A DNA stretch of 63,320 nucleotides, the filler included, from Octopus bimaculoides (Eukaryota), in assembly GCF_001194135.2 (NCBI RefSeq). It is 8 parts of 8 records of this genome, joined end to end, with 100 filler letters (N's around TTAATTAATTAA, not from the genome) between each part and the next. Parts side by side here need not be neighbours in the genome. Positions count along the whole stretch, not along the records: positions 23,150 to 27,514 come from NC_068981.1; 7 more parts are not named here. One strand, given 5' to 3'. The notes under the pieces are model-generated. The model was not told the origin of the DNA. It ran no database searches and saw only the letters and a list, made by a program, of their open reading frames with translations. Numbering within the stretch: the first letter of the stretch is position 1; each line of letters starts with the position of its first letter. Positions 25,141-27,614 of the stretch are shown here, piece after piece. The translations under genes were made by a program, and so were the position numbers.

Positions 25141-25690
25141 TGTTCTAGTCTACTATTACTTAATTTAAAATGGTAGGGTGTGATTTCAGGGAGATTTGAC
25201 TACTATTTCCAGCATGTTGAGTTATCGTACAGAAGCTTCTCTCTTGGACTCTGAGACCAACTGACATGCATTCACATCAACTTACATGGAGTAAAATATT
25301 GTTAGACACTATGCAACAAGAAGAAAAAAGTCTCTCTCTCAGTGAGCTTAGTAGCTATATCTGGGAGCTTAAGGACAAAAAAATAGAATATAGACTAGAA
25401 TGGTGCATACTCGTAAAAACAACTTCTTACAGCTCTACCAATAGACGCTGTGATCTCTGTTTAACCAAACACCTGGTAATTCTAATGGCTAAACCACTTC
25501 TTCTTAATTGAAAATATGAGAAAACAAGTTTTGTCTACATATAGGCCTCTTTGTCTTTTCCAAGTATCGGTAAACCCACTTGACCCTGTACAAATCCTAC
25601 GCTAGCTTCTTCATCTAAATAATACCATTTAGCTGGGAACCACTTAAACTACTTACATGCAAACATTCACCTCCCAACCTCACTCGCTTT

Positions 25691-26524
25691 TTTTTTTCTT
25701 TTTTTTTCCACCCTTTTAAAGCCTAGCCAGGCTCATGGGCCCAGTTTCCCGGTTTCTATGGCGTCTGTGTTCCCTCCAACTGAACGGGACACCAGTCCAT
25801 CGCAGCATTACTCAAGAAACAGGAAGAAAGAGTGAGAGAAAGTTGCGGCGAAAGAGTACAACAGGGGTCGCCACCACCCCCTGCTGGAGCCTTGTGGAGC
25901 TTAGGTGTTTTCGCTCAATAAACACTCACAACGCCCAGTCTGGGAATCGAAACTGCGACCCTCCGACCGCGAGTCCGCTGCCCTAACCACTGGGCCAATG
26001 CACCTCCACAATAAATAAATGCGCCCTTTTAAAGCCTAGCCAGGCTCATGAGCCTGGTTTCCCGGTTTCTATGGCGTATGTCTTCTCCAGCTGGACGGGA
26101 CACCAGTCCATCACAGCGTTACTCATTTTTGTCAGCTGAGTGGACTGGAGCAATGTGAAATGAAGTGTTTTGCTCAGGAACACAACGCGCTGCCCGGTCC
26201 AGGAATTGAAACCACAATCTTACGATCATGGTGCTGACACCCTAACCACTAAGCCACACACCTCCACAAAATAAACGCGCCCTTTTAAAGCCTGGCCAGG
26301 CTCATGGGCCTGGTTTCCTGGTTTCTATGGCGTATGTCTTCTCCAGTTGGACGGGACGCCAGTCCATCACAGCGTTACTCATTTTTGCCAGCTGAGTGGA
26401 CTGGAGCAACGTGAAATGAAGTGTTTTGCTCAAGAACACAACGCGTCACACAGTCCAGGAATTGAAACCACAATCTTCCGATCATGATGCTGACACCTTA
26501 ACCACTAAGCCACATGCCTCCGCT
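25691..26524 (-). mobile_element. head-to-tail SINE trimer (E, E, D/E chimera) inside one 13-bp TSD
   Basis: units 26269-26524, 26011-26268, 25691-26010, each with A/B boxes and the same GGCTAGGCTTTAAAAGGG tail; CCTCACTCGCTTT at 25678-25690 and 26525-26537. Confidence 0.9.
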
Positions 26525-26882
26525 CCTCACTCGCTTTACACACTCCATGATAAATTATTTTAGACCTACACAGGGCTTCCTCTATTACTACAAACTTCCT
26601 GAGTAATTTGGATAGAGTTAGCCCCCTTTTCACCATGAGTTAGAGTTAATCCCCTTTCTTTATACCGCCGGTGAAGTCTAGCCAGAATAAATACATGGAA
26701 AATATGCTCTTACTTAAACTTGGGACTACTGATCAAAATACCCTCCATCCTACATCCACTTTGCAGCAGAATTATCAACTTGGAAATCCACTATAATGTA
26801 AAACTCACCATTCTTTGTCTTTATTCTCGTTACCAATGTATCCCTATATCTTTTGCTCTTCTTACCTCTACATATGACTATG

Positions 26883-26934
26883 CATTCTGATGATGTCTAC
26901 CACTGCAAATGGTAAACAGAAACAATCATAAATG
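26883..26934 (+). ncRNA. degenerate type I hammerhead ribozyme
   Basis: CATT-CTGATGA-TGTCTACC-ACTGCAAAT-GGTAAACA-GAAAC-AATC-ATA-AATG; stems I and II present, stem III and triplet mutated. Confidence 0.55.
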
Positions 26935-27050
26935 TTCTATTACTACCACTTTTCTATATTAATTAATTAAATTAATGGCTTACTAGCGCAAACGACCAAC
27001 TTCTTCCTGTTATTTTTCTTCCATTTTCTTCTTGCATACATATATGTATT

Positions 27051-27089
<39 letters not shown>

Positions 27090-27165
27090 CCATTATAGCA
27101 TGTAATATGCTGTAAAAGAACATTTTCTCTACATATGAAAACTATGAACATGTTTATATTATAAA

Positions 27166-27510
27166 TTAGCAGAGATACCCGGTGTTGCCCGTGTTACATG
27201 CAATTGAAAAATGAGACTTTTCTGTTATATTTTCTGTAAGGAACTGGAATACATATGATTCGAATTTCATCAAAATTGCACATGAGGGTTCTTTCCCTTT
27301 TTACACACCCTAAAAAAATTCTAATCATGAGACATGTATCCCATACTATTGAACTTTATGCGCATATTCCAAAATTTCAGTCTTCTGGAACCTGTAAAAA
27401 AGATTTTGCTCCTGCAAAATGGAGCTCATGGAGCTCTAAAATGTGGGAATGAAGGCCCCTATTGGGGGTGGGGGTGTTAATGTCAACCAGAGAAGTTGAA
27501 TTGTTGGGAA
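27166..27510 (-). mobile_element. non-autonomous Helitron 3' end
   Basis: minus strand ends CACGGGCAACACCGGGTATCTCTGCTAAT: GC-rich subterminal motif plus CTAA (variant of CTAG). Confidence 0.55.
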
Positions 27511-27614
27511 TGTTNNNNNNNNNNNNNNNNNNNNNNNNNNNNNNNNNNNNNNNNNNNNTTAATTAATTAANNNNNNNNNNNNNNNNNNNNNNNNNNNNNN
27601 NNNNNNNNNNNNNN

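What the first reader, a model, noticed from the sequence alone, without database searches (positions are those of the whole stretch)
25678..26537. Three SINEs head-to-tail inside a single target-site duplication
Seen: two family E units and one D-head/E-tail unit are joined with no spacer (tail ATTT directly to the next GTGGAGG head). Only the outermost unit has a poly(A)-like tail, and one exact 13-bp repeat CCTCACTCGCTTT flanks the whole 834 bp. Established: non-LTR RTs can jump between RNA templates, and Pol III can read through weak terminators. Inference: a single integration of a multimeric transcript, or serial template jumping across different SINE RNAs, rather than three independent insertions.
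Basis: partly seen in the sequence, partly recalled or inferred. Interest (0 to 1): 0.75.

Follow-up and report, generated by a model that had tools for sequence, protein, structure and literature searches.

The report
Three SINEs inserted as one block
Three short retrotransposon copies (SINEs) lie head-to-tail on the minus strand, with one A-tail and one 13-base target-site duplication around all 834 bases, so they most likely entered in one reverse-transcription event; this kind of product is already known.

Summary
On the minus strand there are three full-length SINE units:
- A, 26524-26268.
- B, 26267-26010, which is 92% identical to A.
- C, 26009-25708, with a different head and body and a shared tail of about 104 nt.

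The units abut with no spacer. Only C carries an A-tail (A9GA7, 25707-25691). The exact 13-mer CCTCACTCGCTTT occurs only at 25678-25690 and 26525-26537, enclosing exactly 834 nt. No single unit or pair of units has flanking repeats above chance level.

Each unit starts 11-12 nt upstream of a perfect box A. A and B end in T-rich, Pol III-terminator-like tails (TTTATTTT and TTTATTTATT). The joints therefore coincide with the ends of transcripts.

Best reading (about 0.5): one target-primed reverse transcription, started on the A-tail of unit C at a TTT|A nick, followed by two end-to-end template jumps onto E-family RNAs.

Rivals:
- Retroposition of an RNA from a source that was already trimeric (0.2).
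- Tail-targeted sequential insertion or in-situ duplication (0.2).
- Misassembly (0.05).

The closest precedents are tripartite template-switch chimeras and the SINE multimers of rodents, bats and bivalves. I file it as a new member of a known kind, of modest interest.

The parts
26525..26537 (-). 5' copy of the target-site duplication (minus strand AAAGCGAGTGAGG)
   Evidence: Exact 13-mer present only twice in the piece. It is the only flank pair above chance.
26268..26524 (-). Unit A ('E' family). It starts (A)GCGGAGGCATG and ends GGGCGCG-TTTATTTT.
   Evidence: Box A TGGCTTAGTGG at 26512-26502; box B-like GTTTCAATTCC at 26468-26458.
26268..26275 (-). T-rich end of unit A (TTTATTTT). It holds the only T4 run on the sense strand inside the trimer and abuts the head of unit B directly.
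26010..26267 (-). Unit B ('E' family). It starts GTGGAGGTGTG and ends GGGCGCA-TTTATTTATT. 92% identical to A.
   Evidence: Box A at 26256-26246; box B-like at 26212-26202.
25708..26009 (-). Unit C. Different tRNA-like head (GTGGAGGTGCATTGGCCCAGTGG) and body. Its last 104 nt are 86-89% like A/B. It ends AAAAGGGTGG, without the CGCG-TTTATTT end of A and B.
   Evidence: Box A TGGCCCAGTGG at 25997-25987; box B GTTTCGATTCC at 25953-25943.
25691..25707 (-). A-tail A9GA7, the only one in the block. It runs into the AAA that starts the 3' duplication copy.
25678..25690 (-). 3' copy of the target-site duplication
26040..26057 (-). 18-nt palindrome CCAGGCTCATGAGCCTGG in the shared 3' module of unit B. 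The same place in A is 26296-26313 (one mismatch). In C it is 25724-25741, where pairing is kept through G-U-type pairs on the sense strand only.
   Evidence: Inverted repeats I3 and I8; RNA folds of the tails. Only three sequences, so this is suggestive, not proof of a LINE-recognition hairpin.

Best explanation
One target-primed reverse transcription event built and integrated a composite cDNA of three complete SINE RNAs.

Inferred sequence of events:
1. A LINE endonuclease nicked the window's + strand at CGCTTT|ACAC, a TTT|A site.
2. The T-ended DNA primed on the A-tail of a unit-C RNA. That RNA was either 3'-shortened and oligoadenylated, or was reached by an early switch from a LINE poly(A).
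3. The reverse transcriptase ran to the 5' end of C and jumped to the U-rich 3' end of an E-family Pol III transcript (unit B).
4. It ran to the 5' end of B and jumped once more onto an E-family RNA (unit A).
5. A second-strand nick 13 nt away produced the single duplication.

Shown: the anatomy, that is one duplication, one A-tail, spacer-free joints, and unit limits that match a start 11-12 nt upstream of box A and a T-rich end.

Inferred: that the units were separate RNAs, the order of the jumps, and the kind of LINE involved.
For: - Exact 13-nt duplication around the whole 834 nt and around nothing smaller.
- A single A9GA7 tail at the 3' end, next to a duplication that starts AAA after a TTT|A nick site.
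- Inner joints are tail|head with no A-run and no repeat.
- All three units begin in the same register, 11-12 nt upstream of a perfect box A. A and B end in TTTATTTT and TTTATTTATT, which look like Pol III termination tracts of different length, as expected for separate transcripts.
- C belongs to a different family from A and B, so duplication of one unit cannot explain the whole block.
- Precedents: tripartite chimeras inside 14-16-bp direct repeats explained by double template switching (PMC2104539), and template switching documented for L1, L2 and RTE clade LINEs (PMC4476161).
Against: - This is one locus. There is no second copy, no empty site, and no read or RNA support.
- C lacks the CGCG-TTTATTT end of A and B, so its RNA needs an extra assumption (3' shortening plus adenylation, or an early switch).
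- A and B may have been identical when they arrived. Their differences fit neutral decay, which fits two passes over the same kind of RNA but fits an in-situ duplication just as well.
- The canonical ends of the two families are unknown to me, because no other copies could be fetched.
- The heads are not recognised as tRNA by ARAGORN at default thresholds or by Rfam. Pol III transcription is inferred from the boxes only.
Confidence: 0.5

Rival explanations
1. Retroposition of one long RNA from a locus that was already an E-E-D trimer. The RNA would arise from Pol III reading through the weak T4 at the end of the first unit, or from a Pol II or host-gene transcript. This is still a single integration, but no jumps happen at this locus.
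For: - It predicts the same local anatomy.
- Only one T4 run lies on the sense strand inside the block, and unit B has no T4 at all, so read-through is conceivable.
- SINEs that propagate as dimers or trimers are known (Alu; tree-shrew Tu types II and III; PMC13023118).
Against: - It moves the origin of the trimer to another locus without explaining it.
- A Pol II origin would not explain why the 5' end of the insert coincides with the start of a unit.
- No second copy of the trimer could be sought.
Confidence: 0.2
2. A stepwise origin at this site. One element, or a dimer, inserted with the 13-nt duplication. The other unit or units then arrived by insertion primed in the (TTTA)n tail of the resident copy, which would hide the duplications in the tail. 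Alternatively, A/B arose by an early unit-length tandem duplication.
For: - Head-to-tail SINE multimers are very common in some genomes: 11-49% of Ves, B2 and Dip copies, with their origin left open (PMC8466645). They also occur in bivalves and potato (PMC11481361).
- The word TTTATTT stands both before and after unit B and could be a hidden 7-nt duplication.
- The A/B divergence pattern fits decay in place from identical copies. At about 4% change per lineage, an intact 13-nt duplication (P about 0.35) and one interruption in the A-tail are both expected.
Against: - Unit C has no repeat of its own. Its A-tail runs straight into the outer duplication, with no (TTTA) remnant after it.
- There are no A-runs at the inner joints, as L1-type tail insertions leave.
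- The strand to be nicked at the inner tails reads AAAATAAA or AATAAATAAA, with no T-run.
- Unequal exchange in an E-D dimer through the shared tail would duplicate the D head, not the E unit.
- The A and B tails differ in length.
- Inner units are not truncated, unlike the bivalve TSD1-(SINE)n-TSD1 arrays.
Confidence: 0.2
3. Assembly artefact: a false path through SINE copies in a scaffold-level assembly.
For: The piece contains a 304-N gap (23769-24072), so the assembly is scaffolded. SINEs are classic sources of misjoins.
Against: - The units differ from each other at 8% or more of positions, so most k-mers are unit-specific.
- Tail-to-head joints must exist in reads to be assembled at all.
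- The matching 13-nt duplication and the single A-tail would be an odd coincidence for a misjoin.
Confidence: 0.05

Closest known systems
Tripartite chimeric retroelements made by double template switching during LINE reverse transcription (Magnaporthe WEIRD/Mg-SINE/MGL; mouse B2/U6/L1) - PMC2104539
   Same: Three retro-copies fused directly in one orientation and flanked as a whole by one perfect direct repeat of 14-16 bp (here 13 nt). The A-tail or LINE end sits only at the 3' side, and the 5'-most part is full length.
   Different: Those chimeras start on a LINE RNA and mostly switch at internal points of the first template. Here all three parts are SINEs, no LINE sequence is present, and both switches would be end-to-end.
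U6/L1 and U6/poly(A) chimeras; template switching by L1, L2 and RTE clade LINEs - PMC4476161
   Same: A Pol III transcript is taken up from its natural 3' end as the second template, with one duplication and a nick site that is L1-like. The 'early switch from poly(A)' idea could explain the tail of unit C.
   Different: The acceptor there is an snRNA, not a SINE, and mostly one switch occurs.
Head-to-tail SINE multimers of rodents and bats (B2, Dip with B1, Ves) - PMC8466645, PMC10702118
   Same: Full-length SINEs of one or several families stand in tandem, up to eight units. Those authors also leave open whether the cause is insertion into tails or retroposition of multimeric templates.
   Different: From my own knowledge, those SINEs carry A-rich tails, and tail insertion by L1 is the usual reading. 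Here the inner units have no A-tail at all. Whether multimers are frequent in this genome is unknown.
Tandem-like SINE arrays of bivalves, TSD1-(SINE)n-TSD1 and TSD1-(SINE-TSD1)n - PMC11481361
   Same: Several SINE units lie inside one pair of duplications, and arrays that mix families are also reported.
   Different: In the bivalve (SINE)n form the inner units are truncated at head and tail, indicating an internal duplication. In the other form the duplication is repeated between units. Neither holds here.
Complex (dimeric or trimeric) SINE families such as Alu and tree-shrew Tu type III - PMC13023118
   Same: Several Pol III-derived monomers are joined into one retroposable unit.
   Different: Those are families with many copies of the same composite. 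Here only one copy is known, and its monomers keep full tails.

Membership tests
tRNA-related SINE | Internal Pol III promoter: box A (TRGCNNAGTGG) and box B (GGTTCGANNCC) 30-60 nt apart near the 5' end | tested here: met
   Box A is exact in all three units. Box B has 1-2 mismatches and lies 44 nt downstream.
tRNA-related SINE | Head recognisable as a tRNA (cloverleaf or sequence) | tested here: not met
   ARAGORN finds none at default thresholds. At 70-80% thresholds it gives only odd calls. Rfam gives no tRNA match even at E<=10. 'tRNA-derived' therefore rests on the boxes alone.
tRNA-related SINE | Many dispersed genomic copies, each with its own target-site duplication | not testable with these tools
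   The piece holds no further copy. Public collections gave only chance matches of 20-25 nt. Protein-level searches were empty.
Template-switch chimeric retroelement (bi- or tripartite) | Parts fused directly, in the same orientation, without own tails or duplications at the joints | tested here: met
Template-switch chimeric retroelement (bi- or tripartite) | One direct repeat flanking the whole element, and an A-tail only at the 3' end | tested here: met
   13/13 repeat present only at the two outer ends. A9GA7 tail only after unit C.
Template-switch chimeric retroelement (bi- or tripartite) | Parts derive from separate RNAs (different source genes), not from one transcript or from later DNA events | tested here: inconclusive
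   C is a different family from A and B, and the tails of A and B differ in length. However, A and B may have been identical at insertion, and a trimeric source cannot be excluded.
Complex (trimeric) SINE family | The same composite recurs at many loci | not testable with these tools
   No genome or reads were reachable (closed; negative).
Bivalve-type TSD1-(SINE)n-TSD1 array (internal duplication) | Inner units truncated at the tRNA head and the 3' tail | tested here: not met
   B and C start at the same base as A relative to box A. A and B keep the full shared 3' module plus a T-rich end.
TSD1-(SINE-TSD1)n array (unequal exchange between duplications) | The duplication sequence is repeated between units | tested here: not met
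   The 13-mer occurs only twice, at the outer ends.
Ribozyme-bearing tandem retroelements (retrozymes, Penelope-associated) | Hammerhead or other self-cleaving motif in each unit | tested here: not met
   No Rfam family matched 25660-26560 at E<=10 on either strand.

The most novel reading that the evidence does not exclude
In this genome the LINE reverse transcriptase regularly finishes one SINE RNA and jumps end-to-end onto the U-tailed 3' end of another Pol III SINE transcript. Concatemers of full-length SINEs inside a single duplication would then be a routine product and the seed of composite SINE families and SINE-derived satellites. This locus would be a clean, datable example in which the acceptor ends are the natural terminator ends.
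Probability: 0.15. Interest if true: 0.5.

Novelty: new member of a known kind. Interest (0 to 1): 0.3.

Why it matters
If it was a single event, the locus is a natural record of two consecutive end-to-end template jumps between Pol III SINE RNAs. That step is usually invoked, but rarely seen this cleanly, to explain how composite SINEs (dimers, trimers, new head/tail combinations) and SINE-derived tandem repeats are born.

On its own it does not change current views. The mechanism and similar products are already documented in fungi and mammals, and SINE multimers are documented in rodents, bats, bivalves and plants.

Tried and rejected
- **Reads:** There is therefore no read support, no empty-allele test and no genome-wide joint count.
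- **DNA scans for other copies:** the metagenome scans gave nothing and 30 loci, the prokaryote genome scan gave 23 loci, and the viral scan gave nothing. BLAST showed that all these loci match only the 20-25-nt pattern itself, so they are chance hits.
- **Protein route to other copies:** a joint-spanning translation and a six-frame chimeric query of the trimer found nothing.
- **Exact ORF look-ups:** five window ORFs were not on record.
- **Organism identification through the flank ORF:**
  - The word-indexed search was empty.
  - The full HMMER search gave 1078 relatives of a widespread repeated family at no more than about 55% identity.
  - Contigs of one relative (L054/L055) contain no such SINE, so they come from another organism.
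  - The organism remains unidentified. My guess of a SINE-rich mollusc such as an octopus is untested.
- **Literature search by sequence strings:** only chance primer matches.
- **Rejected readings:**
  - Hammerhead or retrozyme tandem: no Rfam hit.
  - Satellite: only three units, of two families.
  - Three L1-type insertions into tails: no inner A-runs or repeats.
  - A 21-nt duplication with microhomology, suggested by the CCTCC that follows both copies three bases later (family D5): it would need three adjacent substitutions, so I treat it as coincidence.

Full report
**What is there.** The usable piece is 23150-27514, with a 304-N gap at 23769-24072. The feature lies on the minus strand. 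Read 5' to 3' on that strand, it is:
- AAAGCGAGTGAGG (26537-26525).
- Unit A (26524-26268).
- Unit B (26267-26010).
- Unit C (26009-25708).
- A9GA7 (25707-25691).
- AAAGCGAGTGAGG again (25690-25678).

A and B are the 256-nt-period tandem pair reported by the repeat finders at 90-92% identity. A global alignment gives 21 differences in 256 positions: 18 transitions, 3 transversions and no indel.

C is related to A and B along its whole length but is clearly another family:
- About 67% identity over the first ~125 nt.
- A ~64-nt replacement in the middle.
- 86-89% identity over the last 104 nt.

'D-head/E-tail' may simply be a sister family using the same 3' module.

**Unit limits.**
- All three units carry a perfect box A (TGGCTTAGTGG twice, TGGCCCAGTGG once). 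A box B with 1-2 mismatches lies 44 nt downstream.
- All three begin in the same register, 11-12 nt upstream of box A: G(T/C)GGAGG. Unit A has one extra A after the duplication.
- A ends GGGCGCG-TTTATTTT and B ends GGGCGCA-TTTATTTATT. Each abuts the next GTGGAGG directly.
- The TTTT at the end of A is the only T4 run on the sense strand inside the block.
- C stops at AAAAGGGTGG and then has the only A-tail.

The joints therefore coincide with what full-length Pol III transcripts would look like: a start a few bases upstream of box A, and an end in a T-rich tract of variable length. That the heads derive from tRNA is not demonstrated. ARAGORN at default thresholds and Rfam do not recognise them.

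The shared 3' module contains an 18-nt palindrome, CCAGGCTCATGAGCCTGG. It is perfect in B and has one mismatch in A. In C it is kept through G-U-type pairs on the sense strand only. This is what a LINE-recognition hairpin would look like, but three sequences prove nothing.

**Is the duplication more than chance?** The 13-mer occurs exactly twice in the piece. I compared 28-nt windows at the start and end of every possible sub-block.
- Only A+B+C gives a long shared word (13 nt).
- A, B, C, A+B and B+C give 5-6 nt.
- In the null distribution from the piece, the median is 4-5, P(>=7) is 0.04 and P(>=13) is about 0.001. That last figure is inflated by the piece's own repeats.

The joined flanks give the empty site ...CCTCACTCGCTTT|ACACAC... 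on the + strand. This is a TTT|A nick followed by a 13-nt staggered cut, as in A-tail-primed retroposition.

**Age.**
- The flanks are strongly CpG-depleted (observed/expected 0.22-0.30), while the block stands at 0.67.
- Between A and B, 6 of 13 CpG sites differ by TG/CA, against 6.5% of other positions. Their divergence looks like ordinary decay.
- At about 4% change per lineage, an intact 13-nt duplication (P about 0.35) and one interruption in the A-tail are both expected.
- A and B may therefore have been identical at the time of insertion. The data do not say whether they were two RNAs of one master, two passes over one RNA, or an early duplication.

**Comparative evidence: none obtainable.**
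- Pattern scans of the metagenome, prokaryote-genome and viral collections returned only chance hits of pattern length.
- Translations of the trimer in all frames found no protein in the large protein collection.
- Five window ORFs are not on record.
- The flank ORF (25266-25511) has 1078 distant relatives, but only about 50 residues (25356-25520) are homologous. The contigs of one relative contain no such SINE.
- The organism is therefore unidentified. An octopus-like, SINE-rich mollusc is my untested guess.

**Mechanism.** A single reverse-transcription and integration event explains every local feature with the fewest assumptions. Priming occurred on the A-tail of C at the TTT|A nick. Synthesis ran to the 5' end of C. 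The enzyme then jumped to the U-rich 3' end of an E RNA (B), jumped again (A), and a second nick 13 nt away closed the event.

This is the double template-switch model used for the tripartite chimeras of Magnaporthe and mouse, which sit inside perfect 14-16-bp repeats (PMC2104539). Template switching onto Pol III transcripts is documented for L1, L2 and RTE clade LINEs (PMC4476161). From my own knowledge, end-to-end jumping onto the 3' end of a new RNA without homology was shown in vitro for the R2 enzyme by Bibillo and Eickbush.

The weak point is unit C. It lacks the CGCG-TTTATTT end and carries A's instead. This needs either a 3'-shortened, adenylated RNA or an early switch from a LINE poly(A), both of which PMC4476161 discusses for U6.

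**Rivals.**
- (a) *RNA from an already trimeric source.* This gives the same anatomy but postpones the origin. Recurrence of E-E-D elsewhere would decide it.
- (b) *Stepwise origin.* Head-to-tail multimers make up 11-49% of Ves, B2 and Dip copies, with their origin left open (PMC8466645). Arrays also occur in bivalves and potato (PMC11481361). Here, however, the inner joints have no A-runs, and the strand to be nicked there has no T-run. C has no duplication of its own, and its A-tail meets the outer duplication directly. The inner units are not truncated as in the bivalve (SINE)n arrays, and the duplication is not repeated between units. A hidden TTTATTT duplication around B, or an early unit-length duplication of the E unit, cannot be excluded.
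- (c) *Misassembly.* This is possible in a scaffolded assembly but unlikely given unit-specific differences, the matching duplication and the single tail.

**Verdict.**
I put it at about 0.7 for its two variants together, and at about 0.5 for template jumping specifically. It rests on one locus.
- It is a new example of a known kind of product, not a new mechanism.

Noticed in passing
window 23150-23768: The + strand is G+T-rich and almost free of C (37% G, 37% T, 6% C; GC skew up to +0.82). It carries an imperfect ~114-nt tandem pair (23428-23539 and 23542-23653, 72% identical) and ends at the N gap. Its nature is unknown; a minisatellite or a heavily C-depleted repeat are possibilities.
   Followed up: partly
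window 23769-24072: A run of 304 N, that is an assembly gap inside the piece. The source is therefore a scaffolded assembly, which matters for trusting repeat joins.
   Followed up: no
window 25266-25511 (homologous part 25356-25520), + strand: An 81-aa ORF whose last ~50 residues (…SSYIWELKDKKIEYRLEWCILVKTTSYSSTNRRCDLCLTKHLVI…) belong to a very widespread repeated protein family. It has 1078 hits at E<=0.001 and the family consensus …STELSKYIWxLKD…RRCDLCLTEKL…CRHRxKHLL. No Pfam family matches. One named member is an 'uncharacterized protein' of the fish Nerophis ophidion. Here it is only a fragment, about 160 nt from the 3' end of the trimer.
   Followed up: partly
L054 and L055 (ENA ERZ25878469): In another, unidentified eukaryote, the gene for a relative of that ORF sits between called genes with RVT_1 and Pao_retrotransp hits. 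This suggests the family travels with, or lies among, retroelements.
   Followed up: no
window 24073-25677 and 26538-27514 versus 25678-26537: The flanks are strongly CpG-depleted (observed/expected 0.22 and 0.30), while the SINE block keeps 0.67. This indicates a CpG-methylating genome and a comparatively young, or CpG-rich, insert.
   Followed up: partly
window 26515-26524 and 25670-25677: The first 10 nt of unit A differ from unit B at 4 positions (AGCGGAGGCA against TGTGGAGGTG), compared with about 7% elsewhere. The flank beyond the 3' duplication reads TTGGGAGGTG, resembling the SINE start GTGGAGGTG (repeat family D5: 21 nt, 86%). I found no convincing explanation; coincidence or an untidy 5' joining are both possible.
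   Followed up: partly
window 24471-24491 and 27056-27087: Pure microsatellites (TG)10.5 and (GA)16. There is also AT-rich, TATA-like low-complexity sequence around 24073-24310.
   Followed up: no
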